The position numbers and the translations under genes were made by a program. The notes beneath the pieces are model-generated. The model made no database searches and was not told where the DNA came from. It saw only the letters and a list, made by a program, of their open reading frames with translations. Of a DNA stretch of 64,000 nucleotides, positions 650 through 43,737 are shown in pieces. The DNA is taken from the IMG/VR virus record IMGVR_UViG_3300032294_002797, positions 1-64,000 of that record. The stretch is one strand, 5' to 3'. The first letter of the stretch is position 1; each line of letters opens with the position of its first letter.

Positions 650-685
650 ATAATTTTATTCTAAAACTTAGTTTGAATATTTTTC

Positions 686-697
686 GGTGTAATACTA
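686..697 (+). promoter_or_regulatory. putative late promoter (GGTGTA motif)
   Basis: Same motif precedes all four antisense HNH genes and several structural genes. Confidence 0.5.
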
Positions 698-701
698 TAC
701 T

Positions 702-795
702 AGGGTGTGGGTAGACACTCTTATAACAGATCAATTTATGATACTGGACGCCCAAATGATTGTCAACTACCCTTGACTTTTGTTTGGGTTGTCTT
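702..795 (+). ncRNA. structured RNA leader, kissing-loop motif copy 1
   Basis: Hairpin 702-721 (loop GGGTAG) and hairpin 746-795 (loop CTACCC); loops are complementary; homologous covarying copy at 10603. Confidence 0.7.
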
Positions 796-810
796 GTTTA
801 TATAGATAAA

Positions 811-1536
811 ATGAAAACAAAAATTTGTGGATCATGTAAAGTTGAGAAATCTATTGAAAGATTTTGTAAAGATAGTAGAAAAAAATCTGGATTATGTAGT
901 CAGTGTAAAGATTGTCGAAAAAAATATAATGATAACAATAAAGAAAAAAGACAAAAATATTATGAAGAAAACAAAGAACTAATATCTTTAAAAAATAAAA
1001 TATATAGATGTTCTAATAAAGAAAAATTAGATAAATACTATCAAAAACATAAAAAAAGACACAATGAATATTCTAAACGATGGTATCATTCTCATAAAGA
1101 ATCACAATCAAAATACAATAAAGAATGGAGAGAAAAAAACAAAGATAGACATCATGCAAATTATATAAAATGGAAAAATAAAAACCAAAAATATTTAAAA
1201 AAATATAGAAGAAAAAGAAGAAAACAGCCAACAGTTAAATTGATAGATAATGTAAGAAGAAGAATCAATAGTATGATTAAAAATAAGAGTAAACATTCAA
1301 TAGATTATTTAGGTATAGATATAAAATCATATAAGAAATATTTAGAAAATTTATTCCAAAAAGGTATGACTTGGAAAAATTATGGAGTTAAAGGATGGCA
1401 TATCGACCACATTATCCCACTATCTTCTGCAAAAAATGAAAAAGAATTGATTAAATTATTCCACTATTCAAATACTAGGCCTTTGTGGGCTAAAGATAAT
1501 CTAATTAAATCAAATCGTCATCCTCATACTTTTTAA
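811..1536 (+). CDS. HNH/endonuclease VII-like homing endonuclease with N-terminal Zn finger
   Basis: CxxC...CxxC N-terminus, Lys/Arg-rich linker, WHIDHIIPL...FHYSNTRPLWAKDN His-Me motif; antisense to neighbours. Confidence 0.85.
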   Translation: MKTKICGSCKVEKSIERFCKDSRKKSGLCSQCKDCRKKYNDNNKEKRQKYYEENKELISLKNKIYRCSNKEKLDKYYQKHKKRHNEYSKRWYHSHKESQSKYNKEWREKNKDRHHANYIKWKNKNQKYLKKYRRKRRKQPTVKLIDNVRRRINSMIKNKSKHSIDYLGIDIKSYKKYLENLFQKGMTWKNYGVKGWHIDHIIPLSSAKNEKELIKLFHYSNTRPLWAKDNLIKSNRHPHTF

Positions 1537-1813
1537 TAAGCCAACCTAATTTCATTAAATCAAACCGTACTTCATCGGTAACTTTCCCCTCGCAGCCACA
1601 TGCATACCAATCCATATAATCTCCTTTTTTTATAAGATCAGATATAATTCCACCGGCATATCGCCATGAGCAAGTCCATTCTTTATCATTGTAAAAAAAT
1701 CTATTATTACACAAAGAACAGTATAGGTCTTTACAATATCTAAATGAGTTTATACATTTATCTTGTATCTCTTTGCTATTAATCAAATCTTTTTCTAAGT
1801 CTGGTTGATTCAT
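1505..1813 (-). CDS. hypothetical protein
   Basis: ORF in leftward run; 3' end overlaps the HNH gene convergently. Confidence 0.7.
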   Translation of the reverse strand: MNQPDLEKDLINSKEIQDKCINSFRYCKDLYCSLCNNRFFYNDKEWTCSWRYAGGIISDLIKKGDYMDWYACGCEGKVTDEVRFDLMKLGWLIKKYEDDDLI

Positions 1814-3210: not shown

Positions 3211-3239
3211 AGTATACCATACTTATCGGCTACTGTCAA
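3211..3239 (-). promoter_or_regulatory. sigma70-type early promoter with CCGATA spacer box
   Basis: TTGACA-gtagCCGATAagtatgg-TATACT (17-bp spacer). Confidence 0.8.
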
Positions 3240-9852: not shown

Positions 9853-10332
9853 AATCCATATCCTTTAAGAATATTTGTAACATAATTTTGTGTTTTAATA
9901 ATATCTATGGCTCTGATAGCATCTTCTAAAGATATAAATTCATATGGCATATCGGGCAAAACTATAGGGACGCCATTTTGTAAGACAACAAATTTATTGT
10001 CTTGTTTAGTAATAGATAGATTCATTTCTTTTCCTCTATTTTAGATTTTACCCACTCAAACCATTGATCTGGAGTAAAATTATAGTATCCTTATAATCTT
10101 GAACACAAGAGATAGCATAAGCAATATCTTCAGCCAGTGTTGGTTTAGTCATTATTTTCTTGCAACACTCCATTCAAATATTTAGCCAAATTCTCCACAT
10201 CATCTTCAGTCCAAACATATTCATGACCATTAGCATTACCATGCTCAATATCAAGTTGGTAACTTTCCAGAGAGTCAAGAATTAGGCCAATTTCATGCTT
10301 ATCAAGATTAATGTTCATTACTTTTCTCCATA

Positions 10333-10512
10333 ATATTGACCATGATGTACCAACTGCACCCGTCCCTACAATTTATTCCACTAAAAGAGGGCCGCTTTAA
10401 TAATAGGATATTTGGAACTATTATTTCACGATTCGGTCTGGTTTAGTCTCCCGTAGGTAAGTATATGACTTATCATCATGGAAAGTCCCATGCGACTCAT
10501 CATAGTCAATAT
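10333..10512 (-). ncRNA. candidate structured RNA (~180 nt)
   Basis: 15-bp closing helix (one G-U on minus strand) with internal hairpins, just downstream of promoter 10532-10559; no ORF of 60 aa or more. Confidence 0.5.
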
Positions 10513-10531
10513 CTAGTTTTGGTCTGACGGC

Positions 10532-10559
10532 AGTTTACCATAACATCGGCACTTGTCAA
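10532..10559 (-). promoter_or_regulatory. sigma70-type early promoter
   Basis: TTGACA-agtgCCGATgttatgg-TAAACT. Confidence 0.7.
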
Positions 10560-10602
10560 CACCAACCTTTAGAAAATATGCCAATATGGTGTATTTATTA
10601 GA

Positions 10603-10699
10603 GTTGAGAGTGTGGTCAGACATTTTCAATACTACAATATAATATCTATCAAACGCCCAGATAATTGTCAACTGACCTTGACGTTATTTGGGCTGTTTG
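10603..10699 (+). ncRNA. structured RNA leader, kissing-loop motif copy 2
   Basis: Hairpin 10603-10630 (loop GGTCAG) and hairpin 10650-10699 (loop CTGACC); complementary loops with compensatory change versus copy 1. Confidence 0.7.
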
Positions 10700-10715: not shown

Positions 10716-11429
10716 ATGACAAATAAAACTTGTAGTAAATGTAACAAAGAGTTTCCAGCAACAAACAAATACTTTCATAAAAATAAAGACCATAAAGATG
10801 GATTAAGAACATGGTGTAAGATTTGTGTTAAAACTTACCAAAATGACCACAAAAAAATTCGTAAATGTTTAGTTTGTCAAGATGACCTAGAACTATATTC
10901 CAAAAAACGATGCAAAAAATGTCAACAAAATTATACTAAACAATGTAGTAAAGAAAGAGATAAATCGGTTAAACGAAAACAGCAAAGTAAATTAAGAACA
11001 AAGAAATTTCATGAAAATAATCCAAATAAATTAAGTGAATATAATAAAAAATATAGAGAAAGATATAATAAATGGAAAAATAGTAAATATAAAAATGATC
11101 TCAATTTTAAATTGCAAAAAGCATTAAGAGACAGACTTTATCATGCTCTGGCTTCTAATATCAAATCTCAACACACAATGGAACTATTAGGATGCTCTAC
11201 AGAACAATTAAAGGTTCATATAGAGTCACAATTTAAAGATGGTATGAGTTGGGATAATTGGTCTATTAAAGGGTGGCATATTGACCATATTCGCCCATGT
11301 TCTTCGTTCGATCTTTCTGATCCTGTTCAACAAAAACAGTGCTTTCATTACTCTAATCTTCAACCATTATGGGCTAGTGAAAACCTAAAAAAGAATAATA
11401 AATGGGTTTCAGACCCAATAGTATTTTGA
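10716..11429 (+). CDS. HNH/endonuclease VII-like homing endonuclease
   Basis: Zn-finger N-terminus; GWHIDHIRPC...FHYSNLQPLWASEN; paralog of 811..1536. Confidence 0.85.
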   Translation: MTNKTCSKCNKEFPATNKYFHKNKDHKDGLRTWCKICVKTYQNDHKKIRKCLVCQDDLELYSKKRCKKCQQNYTKQCSKERDKSVKRKQQSKLRTKKFHENNPNKLSEYNKKYRERYNKWKNSKYKNDLNFKLQKALRDRLYHALASNIKSQHTMELLGCSTEQLKVHIESQFKDGMSWDNWSIKGWHIDHIRPCSSFDLSDPVQQKQCFHYSNLQPLWASENLKKNNKWVSDPIVF

Positions 11430-18943: not shown

Positions 18944-18993
18944 CTCTTTTCTCCTTTGAAAACTATCATACACCAATCAGCCGGTTTGTCAAG

Positions 18994-19066
18994 TGGGGCC
19001 TGTGGGACTCGAACCCACGACCAAAGGTTTAAAAGACCCTTGCTCTACCAACTGAGCTAAAGCCCC
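18994..19066 (-). tRNA. trnK: tRNA-Lys(TTT)
   Basis: Full cloverleaf, anticodon loop CT-TTT-AA, TTCGA T-loop; own promoter. Confidence 0.95.
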
Positions 19067-19106
19067 TACTTTGTATAGTTTATCCTATCGCTTCCATATT
19101 GTCAAG

Positions 19107-19178
19107 TGACCCCAATGAGAATCGAACTCATATTAACAGATTGAAAGTCTGCTTTCCTAACCATTAGAAGATGGGGCC
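19107..19178 (-). tRNA. trnE: tRNA-Glu(TTC)
   Basis: Cloverleaf, loop CT-TTC-AA. Confidence 0.9.
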
Positions 19179-19309
19179 ACTCCCGCAACTCAACGTCAGC
19201 CTCCGTTTTGCTATTGTACATAATCGGTATTCTGTTGTCAAGACTTGAGTTGTTTTTGAATCGAAATGGTGTATAATGACTTAGTGAGTTGTACTACAGG
19301 AGTTCCATT

Positions 19310-19798
19310 ATGAAATGTATTAATTGTAATAAAGATACAGATAACCCTAAATTTTGCTCTAGATCATGCGGAGTGTCTTATAACAACAGAGTAAAACCAA
19401 AAAGAATTAAAAGAATGCAAACATGTATATTTTGTAAAAATCAATTTCATTCTTTACATAGTTATAATCAAAAATATTGTAATAAAAAATGTTTACAAAA
19501 TCATAGAGAGCACAATATCCAAACCAATGGTTTTGGAGAAGGTCATTATCATAATAATTCTATTAGAAAATACCTAATTAAAAAACATGGTAATCATTGT
19601 ATGATCTGTAACCAGTCTGGAGATAATTGGAACGGTAAGCCAATTACTTTAATTGTGGATCATATTGATGGTAAATCTAATAACAATAAACTAGATAACC
19701 TTAGAATTGTTTGTCCTAATTGCGATAGTCAACTACCTACATACAAAGCAAAAAACAAAGGAAATAGCACTCGTAGTTATTTTATAGTCCAAAAGTAA
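19310..19798 (+). CDS. HNH endonuclease inserted in tRNA cluster
   Basis: FCSRSC and YCNKKC Zn motifs; VDHIDGKSNNNKLDNLRIVCPNC; GGTGTA upstream; AGGAG RBS. Confidence 0.9.
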   Translation: MKCINCNKDTDNPKFCSRSCGVSYNNRVKPKRIKRMQTCIFCKNQFHSLHSYNQKYCNKKCLQNHREHNIQTNGFGEGHYHNNSIRKYLIKKHGNHCMICNQSGDNWNGKPITLIVDHIDGKSNNNKLDNLRIVCPNCDSQLPTYKAKNKGNSTRSYFIVQK

Positions 19799-19799
19799 A

Positions 19800-19874
19800 T
19801 AGGGCGTGGAGGAGTCGAACCTTCCCTTTTTTTCACCTTATAAGAGTGACTGCCACTACCGGCGGCAACGCCCC
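19800..19874 (-). tRNA. trnI: atypical tRNA-Ile(TAT)
   Basis: Acceptor GGGGCGT/ACGCCCT, anticodon arm TCACT-CTTATAA-GGTGA, TTCGA; short D-loop and T-stem mismatch. Confidence 0.65.
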
Positions 19875-19924
19875 ATATGAGTATCATACACTATCTATCG
19901 TCAGTTGTCAACCCCAATCTTTAG

Positions 19925-20009
19925 CGGAATCTGAGGGATTCGAACCCCCGGAGGATTTCTCCTCGTCGGTTTAGTAAACCGGTGCATTAGACCACTCTGC
20001 CAAGATTCC
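19925..20009 (-). tRNA. trnS: tRNA-Ser(ACT)
   Basis: Type II cloverleaf with long variable arm, G73, loop TT-ACT-AA. Confidence 0.85.
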
Positions 20010-20012
20010 AAA

Positions 20013-20084
20013 CTGGCGAGACAGGATTCGAACCTGTAACCTAGCGGTTAACAGCCGCTTGCACTACCGTTGTGCTACCCGCCA
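20013..20084 (-). tRNA. trnN: tRNA-Asn(GTT)
   Basis: Cloverleaf, AGCGG-CTGTTAA-CCGCT. Confidence 0.92.
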
Positions 20085-20089
20085 TCAAT

Positions 20090-20161
20090 TTCCGGAGCAT
20101 GGGTACGATCCATGAATAAACGGACCAAAGCCGTTTGTGATACCAGTTTCACCACTCCGGA
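20090..20161 (-). tRNA. trnQ: tRNA-Gln(TTG)
   Basis: Cloverleaf, AACGG-CTTTGGT-CCGTT; atypical T-loop ATCGTAC. Confidence 0.8.
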
Positions 20162-20164
20162 GCA

Positions 20165-20235
20165 AGCCCACAACTAGAATCGAACTAGTATTAGATGATT
20201 ACAAATCAACTGTATTACCATTATACTATGCGGGC
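20165..20235 (-). tRNA. trnT: tRNA-Thr(TGT)
   Basis: Cloverleaf, loop TT-TGT-AA. Confidence 0.85.
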
Positions 20236-20240
20236 GAAGC

Positions 20241-20429
20241 CTACATATCATAGTCCTGACGCCAACCCCTGTCAATATCACGACGGGTACGCTGACGCTT
20301 GGGACGGTTATCAAACAACGTATTACGTTCTTCTCGGTGTCCAGTAGCCAACTCCCACGGTTGCTTGACCTTGACCTTGATCTTATTGTGGTTGCGTTGG
20401 GGTCGAGTATCGTCGTTGAGGTGGTGCAT
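20241..20429 (-). CDS. basic hypothetical protein
   Basis: Arg-rich small ORF; start uncertain. Confidence 0.55.
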   Translation of the reverse strand: MHHLNDDTRPQRNHNKIKVKVKQPWELATGHREERNTLFDNRPKRQRTRRDIDRGWRQDYDM

Positions 20430-20637
20430 AGTCAAACCATTGTCCATTATCGTGTAAATAAAAAACCTTGTCAATATTAGGATCGTACGCCATTAAACAG
20501 TATTGTACCGGATAAACTGGTTTTGTCAACTGTTTTTGTGGAAGTTTAGGAAGTTTAATATCGCCCTTTTGATAGTCTTTTACACCAGTATAGGCTAAAC
20601 CTAATAGTGCAACGATTACCCCAATCCATTGGATCAT
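20383..20637 (-). CDS. membrane-anchored hypothetical protein
   Basis: AGGAGA RBS, N-terminal TM segment; follows promoter 20660-20688. Confidence 0.7.
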   Translation of the reverse strand: MIQWIGVIVALLGLAYTGVKDYQKGDIKLPKLPQKQLTKPVYPVQYCLMAYDPNIDKVFYLHDNGQWFDYAPPQRRYSTPTQPQ

Positions 20638-20659
20638 CAATTCTCCTTTGCGTCTAACT

Positions 20660-20688
20660 AGCATACCATACTTATCGGCAATTGTCAA
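20660..20688 (-). promoter_or_regulatory. sigma70-type early promoter with CCGATA box
   Basis: TTGACA-attgCCGATAagtatgg-TATGCT. Confidence 0.8.
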
Positions 20689-20705
20689 GCGACTCTTTAG
20701 TTTTT

Positions 20706-20787
20706 CCTAAGTACTTGAGACATAAGCACTTACGTCAAATTTTCGCCGCCCCGTTCGTCCTAAGTGGTTACCCACAAAGGACTTAGG
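20706..20787. repeat. 82-bp element copy 3
   Basis: 29+24+29. Confidence 0.9.
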
Positions 20788-20794
20788 AAGAGTT

Positions 20795-21031
20795 TTATTC
20801 TTCTTCCAGGCTCCAACCGGCTTTTCTTACCACCTTAGTAGTTTTATATACTTTAGTATCTGGTAATGCAGTAGCGTAGTCTTTGAATCCTCTTTCATCA
20901 AGATAAAAATGTTCGTCGAGCGTGTCAAATTTATTAGTCTCCCATAATGCTGCTACAGCAGCGTCCAGAGGTTTTTGATTAGTAGAGTAAATAAGTTGTA
21001 GTGTGCCAGATTGTATATAATACTTAGCCAC
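20795..21031 (-). CDS. hypothetical protein
   Basis: GTG start with GGAGG RBS, overlapping the upstream stop. Confidence 0.65.
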   Translation of the reverse strand: MAKYYIQSGTLQLIYSTNQKPLDAAVAALWETNKFDTLDEHFYLDERGFKDYATALPDTKVYKTTKVVRKAGWSLEEE

Positions 21032-21623
21032 TATACCCTCCACCACATTTGTAGCATGAGCAATATTCATATTCGTCCCCGCCCGTTCCTTCGGCCCAAC
21101 AAGGTTCCTCATACTCACCAATATCACCAAGGCTTTCACGACCAACATCTACAATAACCAATACTTTATGCTTACCTCTTTTTACATATCCAAGATTAGC
21201 ATTATGAGCATCTGTATAGGTTATCCCAAACATTTCTTCAATATCAACTATCATTCTGTTGATAACTTCGAAATTTTCGCACAGGTCATTCTCATAACAG
21301 TAGCCATCGCATTGCCTACACTTGAGCGGTGAAGCAATTTCGGTCAAGTATCCCCACTCGCTCAGTACCAATTTTTCCTCGGCTTTATAACCACCCTTGC
21401 CGTCTGATACTGCAAAATAGTTAGGAATCCGTATTCTGCAAACTGGACTATAAACACGCGGAGTAAAAGTACACGGTTCAGATAGTTCGCTCTGTATATG
21501 ATGAGCAAACTCGGCTAAACTTTTATTAGGAAAACTTTTGAATCCGTATCGGCTACCTTTCATTTTATAGAAAGAGTTTTTGCTTCCCCCATCGGCATAT
21601 TTACCAATATATTTAGTAGTCAT
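21024..21623 (-). CDS. protein kinase-like fold protein
   Basis: Gly loop DGGSK, beta3 Lys (GFKSF), catalytic DAHNAN, DFG-like DVG. Confidence 0.65.
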   Translation of the reverse strand: MTTKYIGKYADGGSKNSFYKMKGSRYGFKSFPNKSLAEFAHHIQSELSEPCTFTPRVYSPVCRIRIPNYFAVSDGKGGYKAEEKLVLSEWGYLTEIASPLKCRQCDGYCYENDLCENFEVINRMIVDIEEMFGITYTDAHNANLGYVKRGKHKVLVIVDVGRESLGDIGEYEEPCWAEGTGGDEYEYCSCYKCGGGYSG

Positions 21624-21632
21624 TACATTCTC

Positions 21633-22343
21633 CTAATGAGAGGGAAACAAAACATTAGCCAGACCACGAACACAAAGATCACAGTGTACGCTATTTTTGC
21701 TTTTTGTACAAGTCACAACGCCACGACCACGACGGATTTCCGGGCAAGTGATAAACTTCTCACCCTCTAATACAACGAGTTTAGGCAACGCTTCTCTCCA
21801 TGCGGCGGCTTTAGCCTTGCCGCGAGGACGCTTGGGAGCGATTTTAGTATCACTATCGCACCATGCGAAAAGTTTGAAACCAGCCGCTTTCGCTTGTTTC
21901 ATATCTTCACCGTCGTGGATACTAGCATACATATTTATATACTTGCCAAGTTGAGTAGACAATTTAGTATCATAAATATGGGTATAAGCCCACATAGTCG
22001 GCAGACTACCGCCACTGGCAAGAATACTCTCACAAGCCCACAATACATTATCTACATACTCATGGTCGAGTTCGCCATACTTGAAAAAGTCTCCACGCTC
22101 ATGCCAGCGAACATCTTTATTTTTCTTGACAGCATCCACAAGCATGGCACGGATACGATTTTTTTCCGTGATAAGATTTTGCATACCGGCAGGACGCACA
22201 CCGGGATAGATATTTTCCAAGTCCTCGGCATAGCATCCGTTCCCGAGAAAATCACAATCGCTAGGGCAAGTATCGCCAACGGGGCGACTCACTACGATGC
22301 AATTTTCTTTGCCCAACTTGTCATTACCATTTGCTGTTTTCAT
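21633..22343 (-). CDS. Gp88-like Cys-rich (putative Fe-S) phage protein
   Basis: TCPSDC...GCYA, VRWHERGDF, WAYTH and C-terminal CP...C...CxxC. Confidence 0.7.
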   Translation of the reverse strand: MKTANGNDKLGKENCIVVSRPVGDTCPSDCDFLGNGCYAEDLENIYPGVRPAGMQNLITEKNRIRAMLVDAVKKNKDVRWHERGDFFKYGELDHEYVDNVLWACESILASGGSLPTMWAYTHIYDTKLSTQLGKYINMYASIHDGEDMKQAKAAGFKLFAWCDSDTKIAPKRPRGKAKAAAWREALPKLVVLEGEKFITCPEIRRGRGVVTCTKSKNSVHCDLCVRGLANVLFPSH

Positions 22344-22364
22344 ATTCTTTCTCCTGTGCTACTG

Positions 22365-22393
22365 ATTCTACATTAGAGTATCGGCAGTGTCAA
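22365..22393 (-). promoter_or_regulatory. sigma70-type early promoter with CCGATA box
   Basis: TTGACA-ctgCCGATActctaatg-TAGAAT. Confidence 0.8.
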
Positions 22394-22421
22394 GAGAAAA
22401 ACTTTGGCAAAAATATTTTGA

Positions 22422-22503
22422 TGCAAGTCCTTGCTGCATCAGCAGTTACGTCAAAATCGGCCCCGCGAATTCGCCCTAAGTCTTTATGCTGCAACAACTT
22501 AGC
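22422..22503. repeat. 82-bp element copy 4
   Basis: 29+24+29; abuts the tRNA-Asp 3' end. Confidence 0.9.
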
Positions 22504-22576
22504 GAGAGCGACGGGACTTGAACCCGCAACCTCCAGCGTGACAGGCTGGCGATCTAACCAATTGATCTACGCTCCC
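22503..22576 (-). tRNA. trnD: tRNA-Asp(GTC)
   Basis: Cloverleaf, CCAGC-CTGTCAC-GCTGG. Confidence 0.95.
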
Positions 22577-22579
22577 AAA

Positions 22580-22651
22580 TAGCCCCAAGAGGAATCGAAC
22601 CTCTAACCAGTGCTTAGAAGGCACTTGTTATATCCATTTAACTATAGGGCC
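22580..22651 (-). tRNA. trnR: tRNA-Arg(TCT)
   Basis: Cloverleaf, AGTGC-CTTCTAA-GCACT. Confidence 0.92.
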
Positions 22652-22717
22652 ATAATACCGATAGCCGCCAGTTATTCACCAGCGGCATCTCGGTTTATTA
22701 TAGCATATCGTAGATGC

Positions 22718-28972: not shown

Positions 28973-29058
28973 TGCTTTTCCTCCTTATTGGAATACGCTT
29001 AGTCTACAATGCTTATCGGCTAATGTCAATAGATTTAGCCATAAAATTATTTTTTGAT

Positions 29059-29140
29059 CATAAGTCTATATCCCATAACAACTTACGTCAAATTTTCGCC
29101 GCCCCGCTCGCCCTAAGTGCTTACGCACCAAGGGTTTGCG
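29059..29140. repeat. 82-bp element copy 11
   Basis: 29+24+29. Confidence 0.9.
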
Positions 29141-29147
29141 GCGAGTT

Positions 29148-29381
29148 TTATTCAAAGTCTACGAAAATAACTTGATTATATCCACGAGGCTTAATAGTAA
29201 GGCTCTCGCTGTAATCGTAGGTATCGGCCTTTACACCCGTCATACCCGCGAGCAACTTGGCCTTTCGCACAATATTACGCTGAGACGCCCCGCTATTAAT
29301 AGCAAACTCATAACGGTTAGCCCAAGAGTAGTTTGCCTCACCATTAAATGTGTCGGTCTGCGTAACGGTAACCTTCATCAT
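29148..29381 (-). CDS. hypothetical phage protein
   Basis: TDTFNGEANYSW; start moved to MMKVTV. Confidence 0.7.
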   Translation of the reverse strand: MMKVTVTQTDTFNGEANYSWANRYEFAINSGASQRNIVRKAKLLAGMTGVKADTYDYSESLTIKPRGYNQVIFVDFE

Positions 29382-29495
29382 CTTATTATTCCTTTTAGAG
29401 AGAAAAGTGTCGATCCAATTTTTAACGTTTTTAGTAAGCATTTTAACAATTCTGTGTATAATATAGTATACATCAACTATCAGGAGATGAATACT

Positions 29496-29897
29496 ATGTC
29501 AAAATATGATCCTCAAGAATACCAAAGAAACAAACAGGCCTATTTAGAAAGACAGAAACGATACAAGAACAAACACAAGGATACCATCAATGAGCGTCAA
29601 CGTCAATACCGTGAGTCAAATAAATCCCAACTCAATGTTTATGCCAATAGGCGTAAAAATAAAATTAGAGAAAAATATGATGAATATATGCAAGATAAAA
29701 AATGTAGCCATTGTGGATACTCTGATCCTAGATCGTTAGTTTGGCATCATACTGATTCGTCTAACAAAAAGAATGGCGTTGTTCAATTAGTTGGCAAGAA
29801 ACATGGATGGGATACTATTTTAGCAGAAATTAATAAGTGTATATGTTTATGCCATAATTGCCACAATATATTGCATAATCACCAATCATCTCCGTAG
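29496..29897 (+). CDS. HNH endonuclease
   Basis: CSHCG...LVWHH...EINKCICLCHNCH; AGGAG RBS; TGTGTA late-type motif upstream; start moved from 29136. Confidence 0.85.
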   Translation: MSKYDPQEYQRNKQAYLERQKRYKNKHKDTINERQRQYRESNKSQLNVYANRRKNKIREKYDEYMQDKKCSHCGYSDPRSLVWHHTDSSNKKNGVVQLVGKKHGWDTILAEINKCICLCHNCHNILHNHQSSP

Positions 29898-39033: not shown

Positions 39034-39496
39034 TTTTCATATAATTATAGATACCAGAGAACAACATCCATGGTCTTTCGATCACATGGAAAAAAGTATA
39101 TCTAAATTAGATACTGGGGATTATTCCTTAAAAGGATTAGAACATATTTTTTGTATAGAGCGTAAAGGTAGTGTAAGTGAATTTGCTAATAATATTACAG
39201 AAAAAAGATTTAAAGATGTTATTGAAAGAATGAATAAAATACCTAATTCTTTCTTACTATGTGAATTTGATCTAGAAGATGTTTTAATATATCCTGTGGG
39301 ATCTAATGTTCCTAAACGCATGTGGGATAAGTTAAAAATATCGCCTAAATTTATTTTGAAACACATGATAGAATTACAAATAATATATAATATTAAACTG
39401 GTATTTTGTGGTAATGCATCTAATGCCGAAAAGATGGCTATCAGTATCATGAGAAAAATTTATGAATATCACGGACAGCCAAAAACAGATCTTTGA
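39017..39496 (+). CDS. ERCC4/XPF-domain nuclease
   Basis: IIIDTREQ, LDTGDYS and IERKGSVSE motifs. Confidence 0.85.
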   Translation: MIDFSNFHIIIDTREQHPWSFDHMEKSISKLDTGDYSLKGLEHIFCIERKGSVSEFANNITEKRFKDVIERMNKIPNSFLLCEFDLEDVLIYPVGSNVPKRMWDKLKISPKFILKHMIELQIIYNIKLVFCGNASNAEKMAISIMRKIYEYHGQPKTDL

Positions 39497-41495
39497 CGAT
39501 GCTTGGCTAGACCTAGGAGATCTTAATTCTCTTAGTATAGCAAGCAATCCAATGATTGGTAGATCAGAACAGGATATAGAAAATCCAGATTTACATCTTA
39601 TAAAGTTATTAAAAAGTCCTAGATACATAGCAACAACATGTAAATTACTATTTAATATAGAATTGCATCCTATGCAAGTAGTAATTCTACAAGAATTTTG
39701 GGAAAGACCATTTCCTATGTATATCGCTAGTCGTGGTTGGGGTAAATCTTTTCTTTTAGCTTTATATTCTATATTACGATGTATTTTTAATCCTGGTACT
39801 AAAATTGTAATAGTTGGCGCAGCTTTTAGGCAGAGTAAAATTATTTTTGAGTATATGGAAACTATCTGGAGAGGCAGTCCTATTCTGAGAAGTATTTTTA
39901 ATGGTAATGATGATGGTCCTCGTCGAGATGTTGATAGATGTACTATTAGATTAGGAGATAGTTGGACCATAGCTGTTCCTATGGGAGATGGTAGCAAAAT
40001 CAGAGGTTTAAGAGCTCATATTATTATTGCGGACGAGTTTGCATCTATATCTCCGGATATTTATGAAACAGTAGTCGCTGGTTTCGCAGCAGTTTCAGCT
40101 AGTCCTATCCAGAATGTTAAAGAACAAGCCAAAAAAAGAGCCATGATCGAAGCAGGAGTATGGAATGAAGAACTAGAACAGCTAAGTCAAAAAATGGGTA
40201 ATCAGGCTATTATATCAGGAACAGCAGACTATTCATTCAAACATTTTGCTAATTATTGGAAACGATATAAAACTATTATAGAAAGCAAAGGAGATAATAA
40301 AAAATTAGAAGAAATTTTTAATGGTGAAGTACCAGAAAATTTTAATTGGAAAGACTATAGTATTATTAGAATACCATATGAACTCATACCTAAAGGCTTC
40401 ATGGATGACAAACAGGTTGCTAGAGCAAAAGCCACCATTCATACTGGCATATATAATATGGAATATGCAGCATGCTTTACGGCTGACAGCGATGGGTTTT
40501 TTAAGAGAAGTTTAATCGAAAGTTGTGTCACTAGCGATACACGACCCATTATATTAAATAACCAGATCATTGTCTTTGATTCTGTTACTACTGGCAATAA
40601 TTTTAGTAAATATATCTATGGTATCGACCCAGCCTCTGAAAGAGATAATTTTAGTATTGTAGTCTTAGAACTACATCCTGATCATGCTAGAATTGTTTAT
40701 TGTTGGACTACTAATAGAACTAATTTTAAAGAGCGTCAAAAAACTGGTTTAATTAATGAATATGATTTTTATAGTTTTTGCGCTCGTAAAATCCGAAACT
40801 TAATGAAAGTATTTCCTCCTTTGAAAATAGGAATGGATGCTCAGGGTGGTGGTATAGCTATCGAAGAGTCGCTGCATGATCCGTCAAAATTAGAAAATGG
40901 AGAAATATTGATATGGCCTACTATCAATAGAGACAAGCCTAAGGATACAGATGATCAGCCAGGACATCATATATTAGAGCTGGTACAATTTGCTAAAGCA
41001 GACTGGACTAGTCAAGCTAATCATGGCTTACGAAAAGATTTAGAAGATAAAGTATTATTATTTCCTAGATTTGATCCTCTTACATTGGGCTTAGCTTTAG
41101 ATCAAGAGGGCAAAAATATTCTAGACACCGATCTTAATCCTTTATATGATAGCTTAAGTGAGTGCATATTGGAAATAGAAGAATTAAAGAATGAACTTAC
41201 CACTATTGTAATGACACAAACAAGTACAGGATCTGGAGGTCGTGATCGTTGGGATACTCCAGAGGTTAAATTACAAAATGGAAAAAAGGGTAGACTACGT
41301 AAAGACAGATATAGCGCACTATTAATAGCTAATATGATAGCTAGACAATTAAAGACATATTTGGTAGCACCATCTTATGATGTTATTGGAGGAAATAGAA
41401 CGGAAATAGTGAAACAAGATGGTCAATTATACAAAGGCCCTGAATGGTTTACTTCTGGAGCTAATGAAGACCTATATAATGGCATATATCGATAA
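39462..41495 (+). CDS. terL: terminase large subunit
   Basis: LHPMQ Q-motif, Walker A SRGWGKS, IRGLR, Walker B IIIADEF, nuclease GIDPA...KDRYSA. Confidence 0.9.
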   Translation: MNITDSQKQIFDDAWLDLGDLNSLSIASNPMIGRSEQDIENPDLHLIKLLKSPRYIATTCKLLFNIELHPMQVVILQEFWERPFPMYIASRGWGKSFLLALYSILRCIFNPGTKIVIVGAAFRQSKIIFEYMETIWRGSPILRSIFNGNDDGPRRDVDRCTIRLGDSWTIAVPMGDGSKIRGLRAHIIIADEFASISPDIYETVVAGFAAVSASPIQNVKEQAKKRAMIEAGVWNEELEQLSQKMGNQAIISGTADYSFKHFANYWKRYKTIIESKGDNKKLEEIFNGEVPENFNWKDYSIIRIPYELIPKGFMDDKQVARAKATIHTGIYNMEYAACFTADSDGFFKRSLIESCVTSDTRPIILNNQIIVFDSVTTGNNFSKYIYGIDPASERDNFSIVVLELHPDHARIVYCWTTNRTNFKERQKTGLINEYDFYSFCARKIRNLMKVFPPLKIGMDAQGGGIAIEESLHDPSKLENGEILIWPTINRDKPKDTDDQPGHHILELVQFAKADWTSQANHGLRKDLEDKVLLFPRFDPLTLGLALDQEGKNILDTDLNPLYDSLSECILEIEELKNELTTIVMTQTSTGSGGRDRWDTPEVKLQNGKKGRLRKDRYSALLIANMIARQLKTYLVAPSYDVIGGNRTEIVKQDGQLYKGPEWFTSGANEDLYNGIYR

Positions 41496-41550: not shown

Positions 41551-43737
41551 ATGGCCAATAAAAAGTATCCAAAAAGTTCAGCTATAGACGATCAATCTAT
41601 TATCGGCCAAGAAGCATATGTTACATGGGGAGATGATTTATCGTCAAAAAGAGAAGCTCTAAATAAATCTTCTGAATCTATGTCAGAATATACACTTATA
41701 GAGCATCAACATGCTAATGCTAATAGACGATATGGGTTAAATTATTCCAATCTAGATGGTAGCACCGGCGGCCGCCCAGGCTTAACCAGATCTGACTATG
41801 ATTTTTTTCGTCCAGACGAAGCAGTACCCAAACACATCAAAGGTATTATCAAAAGAGCAGAAGATATTTATCAGAGAGTAGGACTAGTTAAAAATGTCAT
41901 AGATCTTATGGGTGATTTTGGTTCTCAAGGAATTCGATTAGTACATAAAAACAAAAGAATAGAAAGATTCTATAGAAGTTGGTTTAAAAAAATAAAAGGA
42001 AAAGAACGTAGCGAAAGATTTCTTAATAATCTGTATAAAACAGGTAATATAGTAATTAATAGACAAACAGGTAAATTAAGCTTAAAAGTTTCTGATAATT
42101 TATATAGAGCAGTAGGCTCTCCTGATTTAACTGTAGACGACTTGGATTCTATTAAACTAGAAAAAAGAGAGATACCGTGGAAATATACTTTTATAGACCC
42201 ATTCTATGTTGATGTGTCTGCTGGTGCTCTAGCATCTTTTAGTTCGCTTAAAACTTATGAACTATCTTTGCCAGCTAATCTTAGAAGAACTATTAATAGT
42301 CCTAAAAGCACTCAAGAGCAAGAAATTGTAAATAATTTACCATCACAAATTCTGGAAGCAGCTAAAAGTAAAAAGCCGTTTCCTTTGTCCGCAGACAAAA
42401 CACTTGTTTTTCACTACAAAAAAGACGATTGGCAACCTTGGGCTTATCCCATGGTATACTCTATCATGGATGATATTACAGTTATCGAAAAATTAAAATT
42501 AGCTGATATGGCAGCGCTCGACGGAGCAATATCAAATATCCGTATTTTTAAATTAGGTAGTTTAGAGCATAAAATAGCTCCTACCAAAGCAGCAGCTGGT
42601 AAATTAGCTCAGATTCTAGGAAATAATGTTGGTGGAGGCACAATGGACTTAGTTTGGGGGCCTGATATAGAGTTGTTAGAATCCAATACTAATGTTCATC
42701 AATTTTTAGGCGAAGCTAAATATATACCACATCTTAATAGTGTCTATGCTGGTCTTGGCATTCCTCCCACCCTAACAGGTACTTTTGGGGCAGCAGGAAC
42801 AACCAATAATTTTATTAGTCTAAAGACACTAACTCAAAGATTACAGTATGGAAGAGATTTATTGACAGAATTTTGGGATAAAGAAATTGCATTAGTACAA
42901 AAGGCTATGGGTTTTAAATATCCTGCAAAGATAGAATTTGATAGAATGGATCTTAGTAACGAAGATTCTGAAAAAGCATTATTAATTCAATTGGCTGATC
43001 GTAATCTTATTAGTGACGAACTCTTACAAACTCGTTTTGGTTTTGATCCAGATATAGAAAAATCTCGTCTCAATAGAGAACATAGAGATCGAAAGGGTTC
43101 AAGAATGATAAATAAATCTGGTCCGTGGCATGATCCTCAGCCAGACAATAGTTTGAAAAAAATAGCTTTACAAACAGGTATAGTTACGCCGAGCCAGGTG
43201 GGTTTGCAACTCGATACTAAAAAAAATGGAGAGAAGAATTCTCTAGAACTCAGACAAGCTTTTAAACCAACCCAGTTGGTCAAAGATTCGCCAGAATCTT
43301 TGCCAGGCGAACCACAGCAAGGCCGACCCCCATCATCTAAAGATTCCAGTAAAAGATCTCCCAAAAAATTTGCCCCACAAACCGGAGCTAAATTAATCTT
43401 ATGGTGCGCCCAAGCTCAAGAACAAATCAATAAAATTGTAAATCCTATCATGCTAGAGTTTTTCAACAAAAAAAATCTACGTAGTTTATCCAATCAAGAG
43501 ATCGAAGAACTAGAAAAGCTTAAAAGCTCCATATTCTTTAACTTGGATCCTTTCTGCACCATATCCCAAGAAAAAATCTTAAATACTATTAATTCTCCGT
43601 TAAATAACACAATTATTAATGAATATAGTGTATGGTTAAAGCAGTTGTCTTTATCTATTGGTAAAGAAATTAGTACTGATGAAATTAAACACGCTAAAAC
43701 CTCATTTTATCATTTTTTATACAGTGATAAGGTTTAA
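41551..43737 (+). CDS. portal protein
   Basis: Size and position between terL and protease; portal-like helical content. Confidence 0.75.
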   Translation: MANKKYPKSSAIDDQSIIGQEAYVTWGDDLSSKREALNKSSESMSEYTLIEHQHANANRRYGLNYSNLDGSTGGRPGLTRSDYDFFRPDEAVPKHIKGIIKRAEDIYQRVGLVKNVIDLMGDFGSQGIRLVHKNKRIERFYRSWFKKIKGKERSERFLNNLYKTGNIVINRQTGKLSLKVSDNLYRAVGSPDLTVDDLDSIKLEKREIPWKYTFIDPFYVDVSAGALASFSSLKTYELSLPANLRRTINSPKSTQEQEIVNNLPSQILEAAKSKKPFPLSADKTLVFHYKKDDWQPWAYPMVYSIMDDITVIEKLKLADMAALDGAISNIRIFKLGSLEHKIAPTKAAAGKLAQILGNNVGGGTMDLVWGPDIELLESNTNVHQFLGEAKYIPHLNSVYAGLGIPPTLTGTFGAAGTTNNFISLKTLTQRLQYGRDLLTEFWDKEIALVQKAMGFKYPAKIEFDRMDLSNEDSEKALLIQLADRNLISDELLQTRFGFDPDIEKSRLNREHRDRKGSRMINKSGPWHDPQPDNSLKKIALQTGIVTPSQVGLQLDTKKNGEKNSLELRQAFKPTQLVKDSPESLPGEPQQGRPPSSKDSSKRSPKKFAPQTGAKLILWCAQAQEQINKIVNPIMLEFFNKKNLRSLSNQEIEELEKLKSSIFFNLDPFCTISQEKILNTINSPLNNTIINEYSVWLKQLSLSIGKEISTDEIKHAKTSFYHFLYSDKV

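What the first reader, a model, noticed from the sequence alone, without database searches (positions are those of the whole stretch)
686..1536. Kissing-loop RNA leader in front of a homing-type endonuclease (copy 1)
Seen: directly after a GGTGTA promoter-like motif come hairpin 1 (702-721, loop GGGTAG), an AT-rich linker of about 24 nt, and long hairpin 2 (746-795, capped by GTCAA-CTACCC-TTGAC). The two 6-nt loops are perfectly complementary, and the ATG follows at 811. The same architecture precedes the paralogous endonuclease at 10716 but not the two unrelated HNH genes. Inference: an endonuclease-associated RNA motif. It could be a translational switch, the recognition end of a mobile unit, or an RNA cofactor of the nuclease. 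HEARO/omegaRNA-IscB is a precedent for RNA-plus-HNH units, but this RNA is far smaller and the protein lacks RuvC motifs.
Basis: partly seen in the sequence, partly recalled or inferred. Interest (0 to 1): 0.85.

Follow-up and report, generated by a model that had tools for sequence, protein, structure and literature searches.

The report
Kissing-loop leader of phage homing-endonuclease cassettes
A previously undescribed, roughly 110-base RNA leader with two hairpins whose loops pair with each other sits in front of mobile nuclease genes in a group of uncultivated giant phages, and the same DNA carries a strong outward promoter on the other strand, so it looks like a portable expression-control module.

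Summary
A model built from relatives finds 87 copies (57 distinct) in viral and metagenome contigs. 56 of 57 have fully Watson-Crick complementary loops and one has 5 of 6; there are 15 different loop-2 sequences. Both stems covary, with 121 G-U pairs against 2 A-C, so the + strand RNA is what folds. No Rfam family matches.

- On the minus strand, the hairpin-2 apex and the linker form a sigma-70 consensus promoter (TTGACA-17-TATAAT, perfect in 31 of 57). It points at the neighbouring gene.
- Hairpin 2 is followed by a U-rich tail just before the start codon.
- The unit is an insertion. Related phages have empty sites where the flanking genes abut or overlap.
- The leader also precedes a GIY-YIG nuclease, survives decay of the nuclease gene, and is absent from HNH homologues in other phages.

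An RNA cofactor or nuclease-specific operator is therefore unlikely. My best reading is a cis-acting leader that throttles or times nuclease expression, overlapped by an outward early promoter. The structure is well supported. The mechanism is inferred.

The parts
650..1536 (+). Copy 1: the whole inserted cassette (leader plus HNH gene), antisense to the flanking minus-strand genes.
   Evidence: The left neighbour's ATG is the CAT at 647-649, and the right neighbour (1505-1813, minus strand) overlaps the HNH 3' end. Related phages have occupied and empty versions of homologous sites.
686..695 (+). Promoter-like -10 region of the nuclease transcript: GGTG followed by TAATAC.
   Evidence: GGTGTA is present in 51 of 57 distinct leaders, and 35 of 57 have TAnnnT right after GGTG. 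The same (G/T)GTGTAT motif precedes the two leaderless HNH genes and an ordinary gene that has TTGACA at -35. The cassette's left border lies only 3-36 nt upstream of it in most cassettes.
702..721 (+). Hairpin 1: a 7-bp stem with the 6-nt loop GGGTAG (709-714), at or next to the inferred 5' end of the RNA.
   Evidence: The stem covaries, with 6 of 7 pairs changed on both sides in relatives.
722..745 (+). A/U-rich linker. It holds the -10 hexamer and start region of the minus-strand promoter.
746..795 (+). Hairpin 2: a long imperfect stem rich in G-U pairs, with apical stem GTCAA/TTGAC and the 6-nt loop CTACCC (767-772).
   Evidence: In relatives the mean length is 48 nt and the mean folding energy -21 kcal/mol.
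709..772 (+). Loop-loop (kissing) helix: GGGTAG (709-714) pairs with CTACCC (767-772).
   Evidence: The kissing helix is 100% Watson-Crick across 28 distinct rows, with 5 of 7 pairs showing double changes. 56 of 57 distinct leaders are fully complementary, with 15 different loop-2 sequences. At least 16 compensated steps are needed to connect the types.
738..766 (-). Outward-facing sigma-70-type promoter: TTGACA (766-761), a 17-nt spacer, TATCAT (743-738). It points at the left neighbour gene (404-649).
   Evidence: It scores 11 of 12 and is the best promoter-like site of the region. In relatives it is a perfect TTGACA-17-TATAAT in 31 of 57 and at least 11 of 12 in 42 of 57, against 0 of 1140 shuffles at 12. 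It is the same type as about 30 native early promoters on this strand.
796..810 (+). U-rich tail after hairpin 2 and the short spacer before the ATG. Copy 1 has no clear Shine-Dalgarno sequence; most relatives have GG(T/A)G.
   Evidence: 54 of 57 leaders have 4-6 U in the first 8 nt after the stem.
811..1536 (+). HNH-type (beta-beta-alpha-Me) endonuclease of 241 aa, with an N-terminal Cys4 motif, a long helical middle and a C-terminal WHIDHI...N...LQPLWA.DN motif.
   Evidence: phrog_1035 at E = 8e-18. Invariant residues are listed. The model has pLDDT 88.8. The best fold match is the Hpy99I beta-beta-alpha-Me nuclease, over 40 columns only and at a weak E-value.
10588..10597 (+). Copy 2: promoter-like GGTG followed by TATTTA.
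10606..10627 (+). Copy 2 hairpin 1 (GAGAGTGT / loop GGTCAG 10614-10619 / ACATTTTC, with two G-U pairs).
10650..10699 (+). Copy 2 hairpin 2 (loop CTGACC at 10672-10677, complementary to 10614-10619), followed by TTTTAAT.
10643..10671 (-). Copy 2 minus-strand promoter remnant: TTGACA-17-TAGATA, with a decayed -10. A separate promoter-like site lies further left at 10559-10532.
10716..11429 (+). Copy 2 HNH endonuclease, 237 aa, 34% identical to copy 1.

Best explanation
The finding is the 5' control module of a free-standing homing-endonuclease cassette. These cassettes have inserted, antisense, between tightly packed early genes in a lineage of uncultivated phages whose long contigs run to about 200-240 kb.

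Shown by sequence comparison:
1. The + strand RNA folds into a short 5' hairpin, a linker of roughly 24-28 nt, and a hairpin of about 48 nt.
2. The two 6-7-nt loops pair completely, forming a kissing complex.
3. A U-rich tail and then the start codon follow within about 20-30 nt.
4. On the minus strand, the apex of hairpin 2 (-35) and the linker (-10) form a consensus sigma-70 promoter that fires outward into the gene the insertion cut off from its upstream partner.
5. The module travels with two unrelated nuclease families and outlives them.

Inferred mechanism:
- The nuclease transcript starts at a compact GGTG-TAnnnT promoter a few bases before hairpin 1.
- The kissing-locked leader, with its terminator-like hairpin 2, keeps nuclease expression low or delays it. 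It would do this by attenuation and/or by shaping mRNA stability.
- The strong convergent early promoter adds transcriptional interference while early transcription runs.
- The same promoter restores expression of the downstream phage gene. This lowers the cost of the insertion and favours retention of the leader.
For: Structure:
- 95.9% of cells are paired, against 83.0% in shuffles (0 of 500 reach it) and 35-49% when partners are slid.
- The kissing helix is 100% paired, with 5 of 7 pairs changed on both sides.
- 56 of 57 distinct leaders have fully complementary loops; non-cognate loop pairs match fully in 1 of 332 cases.
- Strand: 121 G-U against 2 A-C in the stems.

Position:
- The ATG lies 21-23 nt after the conserved TTGGG of hairpin 2 in most copies.

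Promoter on the + strand:
- GGTGTA occurs in 51 of 57 leaders.
- The same motif precedes the two leaderless HNH genes and a gene with a canonical -35.
- Most cassette borders lie 3-36 nt upstream, so any promoter must be compact.

Minus-strand promoter:
-, and the native promoters of the same type.
- Two of the three members of the divergent subfamily B keep a -35-like box plus TATTAT at the same places (TTGCAA-17-TATTAT and TTGCGG-17-TATTAT, sequences).

Insertion:
- Flanking genes abut or overlap in empty sites, for example TAATG or ATGA overlaps.

Independence from the nuclease:
- GIY-YIG partner.
- Only 4 of 80 HNH-homologue loci carry the leader.
- The leader is intact beside deleted or truncated ORFs in L086 and L308.

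Tail:
- 4-6 U in the first 8 nt after the stem in 54 of 57 leaders.

Precedents:
- T4 seg/mob genes carry promoters for downstream genes and use RNA hairpins to limit nuclease translation (PMC2988022).
- icsA/RnaG combines convergent promoters, interference and a leader terminator (PMC2879508).
Against: - No transcript data exist. Both promoters and the transcript ends are inferred from sequence, and the host is unknown.
- The simple terminator scan did not call hairpin 2. Its U-tract is interrupted, and the stem is long, bulged and A-U/G-U rich.
- No alternative (anti-terminator) pairing conserved across variants was found by inspection.
- The Shine-Dalgarno/ATG region is not sequestered, so a translational effect is not evident.
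- In the copy-2 lineage (GGTCAG loops, about a quarter of distinct leaders) the minus-strand -10 has decayed, yet the kissing structure is intact. The RNA's role therefore cannot depend strictly on that promoter.
- What the kissing interaction itself contributes is not established.
- Family A was collected with a pattern that required TTGTCAA...TTGAC...TTGGG. The invariance of those bases is therefore partly ascertainment.
Confidence: 0.55

Rival explanations
1. Antisense-gated attenuator (a specific version of the main idea). Loop 1 holding loop 2 decides whether hairpin 2 terminates. The transcript from the outward early promoter is complementary to hairpin 1 and carries the loop-2 sequence in its own loop. 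It competes for loop 1, so the nuclease is off while early transcription runs and on afterwards.
For: - The promoters are face to face, with inferred starts about 35-45 nt apart, and the overlap covers hairpin 1.
- A terminator-like hairpin lies just before the ribosome-binding site.
- The layout resembles icsA/RnaG and the pT181-type attenuators (listed).
Against: - The kissing structure persists where the minus-strand -10 has decayed.
- The minus-strand transcript has no terminator of its own and would simply be the neighbour's mRNA.
- No conserved pre-emptor pairing was found.
- There is no direct evidence that kissing alters termination.
Confidence: 0.18
2. Pure stability or insulation element. 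The 5'-terminal hairpin, locked to hairpin 2, makes a compact rod. This protects the nuclease mRNA from 5'-end-dependent decay and from pairing with abundant antisense read-through RNA. It does not regulate.
For: - Hairpin 1 starts about 5-8 nt after the -10-like hexamer, which is where the RNA 5' end is expected.
- The G-U-rich stems fold only in the + strand RNA.
- The cassette lies antisense within a heavily transcribed early region.
Against: - It does not explain the U-rich tail.
- It does not explain why two of the four HNH genes of the same window, with the same promoter type, do without it.
- A single 5' hairpin would suffice for protection.
Confidence: 0.15
3. An independent small RNA of about 100 nt, ending at hairpin 2 and its U-tail. 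It would act in trans or as a cis-antisense regulator of the neighbour's mRNA. The nuclease gene merely lies downstream.
For: - It has the architecture of a small RNA gene: promoter, two hairpins, U-tail.
- The leader is retained after the nuclease ORF decays.
- It overlaps the 5' end of the inferred minus-strand transcript.
Against: - It is never found away from a nuclease ORF or its remnant.
- The ATG spacing is tightly conserved.
- The neighbour genes are unrelated from site to site.
- Retention is equally explained by the embedded promoter.
Confidence: 0.1
4. A protein-binding operator: the nuclease, or another phage protein, binds the leader RNA or its DNA for autoregulation, as I-TevI does at its operator.
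For: - There is a precedent in T4 intron endonucleases.
- The apex TTGTCAA-N6/7-TTGACA is a DNA palindrome overlapping the -35.
Against: - The same leader serves HNH and GIY-YIG nucleases that share no detected domain.
- Loop identity does not follow insertion site.
- The 121:2 G-U to A-C asymmetry and the purely Watson-Crick loop covariation point to RNA pairing, not to two DNA half-sites.
Confidence: 0.06
5. RNA cofactor or guide of the nuclease, or a new self-cleaving ribozyme.
For: Only the adjacency of a structured RNA to an HNH gene.
Against: - No Rfam match, including HEARO and the known ribozymes.
- The protein has no RuvC domain and is 241 aa.
- The leader is absent from most HNH homologues and present with a GIY-YIG nuclease.
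- The variable loops pair with each other, not with a target.
- The conserved unpaired bases coincide with the promoter hexamers of the other strand, leaving little for a catalytic core.
Confidence: 0.03

Closest known systems
RNA structures and embedded promoters that regulate free-standing and intron-encoded homing endonucleases of T4-like phages (I-TevI, segB, mobE, seg43(25), segG), reviewed in PMC2988022
   Same: - Phage homing-endonuclease genes carry their own regulatory RNA hairpins just upstream of the ORF.
- Promoters for the displaced downstream phage gene are embedded in the inserted element, which favours its retention.
- seg43(25) has a very stable hairpin immediately upstream of the ribosome-binding site without sequestering it.
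   Different: - The T4 hairpins are single stems that usually sequester the ribosome-binding site; here it stays free.
- Here two hairpins are joined by a covarying kissing interaction.
- The outward promoter lies inside the leader on the opposite strand, not in the coding region.
- The cassette is antisense to its neighbours.
Countertranscript systems with convergent promoters and a leader terminator: icsA/RnaG of Shigella (PMC2879508) and pT181/pIP501-type plasmid attenuators
   Same: - A weak sense promoter faces a strong convergent promoter inside the leader.
- A hairpin plus U-run lies before the ribosome-binding site.
- Loop-loop contacts are the first step of RNA-RNA recognition.
   Different: - In those systems the kissing is intermolecular and triggers a refolding.
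- Here the covarying loops are in one molecule and no alternative fold was found.
- The antisense transcript here would be a neighbour's mRNA rather than a dedicated short RNA.
- Nothing has been tested experimentally.
Fully paired 6-7-nt loop-loop complexes: ColE1 RNA I/RNA II and HIV-1 TAR/TAR* (from my own knowledge of the structural literature)
   Same: Two hairpins whose entire 6- or 7-nt loops are Watson-Crick complementary. The flanking bases are not complementary, so pairing stops at the loop borders.
   Different: Those are intermolecular. Here the two hairpins are tethered by a linker of roughly 24-28 nt, which is long enough to span a stacked rod of about 35 bp.
HEARO / omega-RNA with IscB
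   Same: A structured RNA lies next to a gene with an HNH motif in a mobile element.
   Different: - No match to the Rfam model.
- The RNA is about 110 nt.
- The protein has no RuvC domain.
- The RNA is not specific to the protein family.
- No guide-like segment is present.

Membership tests
Any Rfam 15 family (including HEARO, group I/II introns, known ribozymes and riboswitches) | A covariance-model match at or near the family's gathering score. | tested here: not met
   The whole-window gathering scan found only tRNAs. Permissive scans of both leaders gave only chance-level hits; the best were E = 0.06 and 0.16, with bit scores far below threshold.
HEARO / omega-RNA-IscB | A partner protein with a split RuvC domain plus an HNH domain, about 400-500 aa. 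| tested here: not met
   The proteins are 241 and 237 aa. There are no Pfam hits above threshold and no RuvC. The only nuclease-like feature is the C-terminal beta-beta-alpha-Me motif.
Intramolecular kissing-loop RNA | Two hairpin loops with conserved Watson-Crick complementarity maintained by compensatory change. | tested here: met
   The kissing helix is 100% paired, with 5 of 7 pairs changed on both sides. 56 of 57 distinct leaders are fully complementary, with 15 loop-2 sequences, and non-cognate pairs match fully in 1 of 332 cases. The pseudoknot was not part of the model that made the alignment.
Intramolecular kissing-loop RNA | Physical formation of the loop-loop helix. | not testable with these tools
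   This needs SHAPE/DMS probing or NMR of the wild type and loop mutants.
Intrinsic terminator / transcription attenuator | A stable hairpin immediately followed by a U-run, upstream of the regulated ORF. | tested here: inconclusive
   Hairpin 2 has a mean folding energy of -21 kcal/mol, and 54 of 57 leaders have 4-6 U in the next 8 nt. Subfamily B has GGGCG followed by T6. However, the consensus terminator scan did not report it, and the U-run is interrupted in family A.
Intrinsic terminator / transcription attenuator | A mutually exclusive anti-terminator fold, or a measured termination. | tested here: not met
   No alternative pairing conserved between the loop-type lineages was found by inspection. 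Termination itself cannot be tested here.
Countertranscript-driven control (pT181, pIP501, icsA/RnaG) | A convergent promoter inside the leader that gives an RNA complementary to the leader's 5' part. | tested here: met
   By sequence only: TTGACA-17-TATAAT on the minus strand is perfect in 31 of 57 and at least 11 of 12 in 42 of 57. It has decayed in the copy-2 lineage.
Countertranscript-driven control (pT181, pIP501, icsA/RnaG) | A dedicated short antisense RNA with its own terminator. | tested here: not met
   No hairpin plus U-run follows on the minus strand. The transcript would run into the neighbour gene, whose ATG lies 3-36 nt beyond GGTGTA in most cassettes.
T4-type translational repression hairpin | The Shine-Dalgarno sequence and/or start codon are paired in the conserved structure. 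| tested here: not met
   The RNAalifold consensus of 28 leaders, extended to the ATG, leaves the last 23 columns unpaired.
Free-standing homing-endonuclease cassette | Presence/absence polymorphism of the gene at the same intergenic position in related genomes. | tested here: met
   Occupied sites have gaps of about 650-900 nt, against 0-12 nt in empty sites at several loci. The junctions are resolved to the overlapping stop/start codons.
Free-standing homing-endonuclease cassette | A nuclease of a homing family (HNH, GIY-YIG). | tested here: met
   phrog_1035 at E about 1e-18 and conserved H/N motifs. The fold match to beta-beta-alpha-Me nucleases is weak. The L071 partner is GIY-YIG, Pfam E = 7e-10.
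Free-standing homing-endonuclease cassette | Cleavage of the empty allele and gene conversion. | not testable with these tools
   This needs purified enzyme and empty-site DNA, or phage crosses.
Sigma-70-type promoter (minus strand) | -35 and -10 hexamers at 17 +/- 1 nt, and actual initiation. | tested here: inconclusive
   The sequence criterion is met very strongly and matches the phage's other early promoters. Initiation was not tested and the host is unknown.

The most novel reading that the evidence does not exclude
The leader is a new kind of RNA timer. An intramolecular kissing contact between a 5' hairpin and the loop of a terminator hairpin sets read-through into a selfish nuclease gene. 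It is overridden by the 5' end of the neighbouring early mRNA, which starts inside the leader on the other strand and carries a copy of loop 2. The 15 natural loop pairs would then be an evolved set of partly orthogonal 'addresses' that keep several cassettes in one genome from cross-talking. Every multi-copy contig seen carries different loops, for example three within 7 kb of Ga0214921_10000057.
Probability: 0.15. Interest if true: 0.8.

Novelty: new variant of a known kind. Interest (0 to 1): 0.62.

Why it matters
1. It adds a well-supported structured RNA class to the small set of natural intramolecular kissing-loop RNAs. It matches no Rfam family and has unusually clean covariation: 15 loop pairs, no G-U and no mismatch except one.
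2. It shows how a selfish nuclease cassette can carry, in about 120 bp, everything needed to live antisense inside a phage early operon. That is its own compact promoter, a structured leader that probably keeps a dangerous enzyme scarce or late, and an outward consensus promoter that repairs the polarity it causes. The outward promoter also explains why the leader outlives the nuclease.
3. The natural series of compatible loop pairs and the strand-specific, G-U-rich hairpin are ready-made parts for RNA-based regulators.
4. The hypotheses can be tested with a short synthetic fragment, without culturing the phage.

Tried and rejected
- Near-identity search of the first 12 kb against cultured phages found no match. 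The terminase is only about 26% identical to Bacillus phage terminases, so no annotated relative was available.
- A first pattern with a miscounted loop found nothing; it was corrected.
- A search with the right-neighbour protein for empty sites returned only the window's own contig and its near twin. Empty sites were then found by tblastn among the loci already fetched.
- A scan of genome contigs gave 32 pattern hits, none with a complementary loop 1. The motif was therefore not found in bacterial or archaeal genomes.
- P1-like pairing of GGUGUA with UAUACC in the linker was considered and dropped. GGTGTA behaves as a promoter element, and ATTATACC is the -10 (with TG extension) of the other strand.
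- An internal + strand promoter (TTGCGG/TTGCAG in loop 1 plus TACAAT) is not conserved in the GGTCAG lineage.
- No conserved ORF for a leader peptide was seen by inspection of the leader sequences.
- Loops as target-site mimics were rejected.
- GTGTATNNT is not over-represented in the window as a whole: 7 found against 11 expected. The promoter reading therefore rests on context, not on counts.
- The ORF-free 270 nt left of copy 2 show no significant fold (z = -1.3).
- A PDB sequence-profile search with the nuclease family found nothing significant.
- Orthogonality of loops within genomes is only suggestive; with this few multi-copy contigs, chance cannot be excluded.
Full report
**What is in the window.**
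The window is the first 64 kb of a 223-kb viral contig, IMGVR_UViG_3300032294_002797. It has no close cultured relative. The left 35 kb carry small genes and nine tRNAs on the minus strand. About 30 near-consensus sigma-70 promoters lie on that strand in front of them. Four HNH-type genes lie on the opposite (+) strand inside this region. Two of them, at 811-1536 and 10716-11429, are paralogues of 34% identity.

**Check of the observation.**
Every element is at the stated coordinates.
- Copy 1: GGTGTA 686-691; hairpin 1 702-721 with loop GGGTAG; linker 722-745; hairpin 2 746-795 with apex GTCAA-CTACCC-TTGAC; ATG 811.
- Copy 2: the same plan, with loops GGTCAG and CTGACC, which is already a compensatory change.
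- Both leaders fold better than all 200 shuffles (z = -3.7 and -4.3).
- Neither matches any Rfam family, at gathering or permissive thresholds.

**Relatives.**
- A degenerate pattern from hairpin 2 retrieved leaders from viral contigs and metagenome contigs.
- The same pattern gave 32 hits in 185,579 bacterial and archaeal genomes, none with a complementary loop 1.
- A covariance model of the two hairpins was run over all fetched loci. It gave 87 credible hits, 57 of them distinct. The model does not encode the pseudoknot.
- 56 of 57 have a loop 2 that is fully Watson-Crick complementary to loop 1, and one has 5 of 6.
- There are 15 different loop-2 sequences. Non-cognate combinations match fully in 1 of 332 cases.
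- Connecting the 14 perfect types needs at least 16 steps, each a change in both loops.
- On the model alignment, the kissing helix is 100% paired, with double changes in 5 of 7 pairs.
- Hairpin 1 has double changes in 6 of 7 pairs and hairpin 2 in 12 of 19.
- The whole structure is 95.9% paired, against 83.0% in shuffles (0 of 500 reach it) and 35-49% when partners are slid.
- The stems hold 121 G-U pairs against 2 A-C, so it is the + strand RNA that folds. The kissing helix holds no G-U at all.
- A divergent subfamily B (L195, L272, L021 second copy) has a different apical stem but again 7-nt complementary loops.

Read on the minus strand, the 5' arm of the hairpin-2 apex is TTGACA. Exactly 17 nt downstream, in the linker, lies TATAAT, usually preceded by TGG.
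- The -10 was not part of any search pattern.
- It is a perfect 12 of 12 in 31 of 57 distinct leaders and at least 11 of 12 in 42 of 57. Of 1140 shuffles, none reach 12 and three reach 11.
- In the window, copy 1 has TTGACA-17-TATCAT, the best promoter-like site of its region.
- Copy 2 and its lineage have a decayed -10 (TAGATA/TAGTTA). A separate promoter-like site lies 100 nt further left.
- The promoter points away from the nuclease gene, into the divergent neighbour. It is of the same type as the phage's own early promoters.
- This explains most of the primary-sequence conservation of the 'linker' and of the apex.

Hairpin 2 averages 48 nt and -21 kcal/mol. In 54 of 57 leaders it is followed by 4-6 U in the next 8 nt, and subfamily B has GGGCG followed by T6. 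A GG(T/A)G Shine-Dalgarno sequence and the ATG follow. This is terminator-like but not canonical, and the simple scan did not call it. The consensus fold leaves the ribosome-binding region free.

The upstream neighbours of 29 cassettes fall into 19 unrelated families and are always on the opposite strand. For many cassettes, related phages have the two flanking genes directly adjacent, with a gap of 0-12 nt and often overlapping stop and start codons such as TAATG or ATGA. The cassette of about 0.7-0.9 kb therefore sits exactly at a gene boundary inside a minus-strand operon. Its left border lies only 3-36 nt upstream of GGTGTA in most cassettes. Its right end overlaps the stop codon of the upstream gene.

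- In L071 (and the metagenome contig L213) the same leader precedes a GIY-YIG endonuclease.
- The HNH family has at least 580 homologues in viral contigs. Of the 80 best loci, only four carry the leader; three were already known and one founded subfamily B.
- In L086 the nuclease ORF is deleted after about ten codons. In L308 its N-terminal two thirds are gone. The leaders are intact in both.

**GGTGTA.**
The motif occurs in 51 of 57 leaders. It is followed by TAnnnT in 35 of 57 and ends 5-8 nt before hairpin 1. The two leaderless HNH genes of the window are preceded by GGTGTATAAT and TGTGTATAAT. An ordinary minus-strand gene has TTGACA-16-(..GGTG)TATGAT. Because the cassette border is so close, the nuclease promoter has to be compact, and this is the only conserved candidate. 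I read it as the -10 region of the nuclease promoter, with hairpin 1 at the very 5' end of the RNA. This is inference: the motif is not over-represented in the window as a whole.

**The protein.**
It has an N-terminal CxxC...CxxC motif, a long helical middle, and a C-terminal WHIDHI.P...HY.N.QPLWA.DN motif.
- phrog_1035 ('endonuclease VII') matches at E of about 1e-18; no Pfam family passes threshold.
- The AlphaFold model has pLDDT 88.8.
- Its best fold match is the beta-beta-alpha-Me nuclease Hpy99I, followed by the nuclease-like domain of autotaxin and Cas9 HNH domains. The match covers about 40 residues only and has a weak E-value.
- I accept it as an HNH/His-Me-finger homing-type nuclease.

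**Mechanism.**
Shown: the RNA fold, its strand, the kissing contact, its position, the insertion polymorphism, the sequence of a consensus promoter on the other strand, and independence from the nuclease family.

Inferred: transcript starts and ends, and function.

The most economical reading is a portable two-way expression module.
- The outward promoter re-drives the gene that the insertion uncoupled from its operon. The T4 review describes this for seg and mob genes and notes that it favours retention.
- The structured leader keeps the nuclease scarce or late. It may do so by partial termination at hairpin 2, by controlling mRNA life, or both.
- The strong convergent promoter adds interference, as with icsA/RnaG.
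- The many G-U pairs make hairpin 2 fold only in the + strand RNA, so minus-strand read-through would be unaffected.

What the kissing contact itself does is open. It may lock hairpin 1 against antisense attack, tune termination, or build a rod of about 35 bp. Its survival where the minus-strand -10 has decayed argues that it does not depend strictly on that promoter.

**Comparison and novelty.**
The closest known systems are:
- the hairpin and embedded-promoter controls of T4-family homing endonucleases;
- countertranscript attenuators with convergent promoters;
- structurally, the fully paired 6-7-nt loop-loop complexes of ColE1 RNA I/II and TAR/TAR*.

It is not a member of HEARO/IscB or of any Rfam family. 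It fails the defining feature of the T4 hairpins that sequester the ribosome-binding site. I rate it a new variant of a known kind, namely cis-regulatory leaders of phage homing-endonuclease genes. The structure is new and the superposition of an RNA fold and an antisense-strand promoter is unusual.

**Caveats.**
- Family A was collected with a pattern that fixes TTGTCAA, TTGAC and TTGGG, so their invariance is partly by construction. True diversity is probably larger, as subfamily B shows.
- The sequences are related, so counts are not independent events. The lower bound of 16 compensated steps is the fairer number.
- All promoter and terminator statements are sequence-based, and the host is unknown.

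Noticed in passing
window 1-35000, minus strand: About 30 sigma-70-like promoters scoring at least 11 of 12 (TTGACA-16/17-TAnnAT) lie in front of small minus-strand ORFs and tRNAs. Many share a CCGATA motif in the spacer, for example at 3239, 6617, 18068, 22393 and 23127. The leader's outward promoter lacks this motif.
   Followed up: partly
window 19268-19798 and 29454-29897: Two further HNH genes lie on the + strand inside the minus-strand early region. One is in the tRNA cluster (phrog_10822/1271) and one matches phrog_3106. Both are preceded by (G/T)GTGTATAAT and an AGGAG Shine-Dalgarno sequence, without the kissing-loop leader. The first also has an outward TTGACA-17-TACAAT promoter just to its left (19241), pointing toward the tRNA-Glu gene at 19106-19178, which is the next feature on that strand.
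   Followed up: partly
window 10319-10587: There is an ORF-free stretch of 270 nt between copy 2 and its left neighbour, with its own minus-strand promoter-like site (TTGACA-16-TAAACT with TG, 10559-10532). It has no Rfam hit and no significant fold (z = -1.3).
   Followed up: yes
window 28973-29450: A GC-richer stretch lies upstream of the third HNH gene, with no plausible minus-strand ORF (the listed + ORF from 29136 looks like an upstream extension). It contains runs such as CGCCGCCCCGCTCGCCC. It may be a remnant of another element or a structured RNA. The gathering-threshold Rfam scan found nothing.
   Followed up: no
window 18993-22652, minus strand: There is a cluster of nine tRNA genes. 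It includes Ile(TAT), found by ARAGORN but not by the Rfam tRNA model, and Ser(ACT), an unusual anticodon with A at position 34 that both tools detect.
   Followed up: no
window 47946-62018: A single 4690-aa ORF lies in the structural module, downstream of the terminase (39462-41495) and the portal (41551-43737).
   Followed up: no
L071:1481-2479 (IMGVR_UViG_3300032247_001490): The same leader (loops ATTGCGG/CCGCAAT) drives a GIY-YIG endonuclease instead of the HNH family. The metagenome contig L213 has the same arrangement.
   Followed up: yes
L086:5543-5663 (minus strand) and L308:2535-2655 (minus strand): The leaders are intact next to decayed nuclease genes: the ORF is deleted after about 10 codons in L086, and the N-terminal two thirds are missing in L308. 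L291 and the second copy in L021 may be frameshifted.
   Followed up: partly
L195:2374-2483, L272:1194-1302, L021:10285-10398 (minus strand): Subfamily B of the leader has different apical stems (GGTTG/CAACT or CAATTA/TAATTG), 7-nt loops GTACGAG, GTGAGAG and GTGCGAG with exact complements, and a stronger terminator-like end (GGGCG followed by T6).
   Followed up: partly
Ga0214921_10000057 (L208:8202-8324, L208:9699-9818, L298:4892-5013): Three leader-nuclease cassettes lie within 7 kb of one 202-kb contig. Their loops differ by single pairs (CTGCAAT, CTGCAAC, CCGCAAT). Every contig with two or more copies carries different loops.
   Followed up: partly
window 1505-1536: The 3' end of the HNH ORF overlaps the 3' end of the convergent right-hand neighbour (1505-1813, minus strand) by about 30 nt. 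In L019 the two stop codons share bases (CTATAG).
   Followed up: partly
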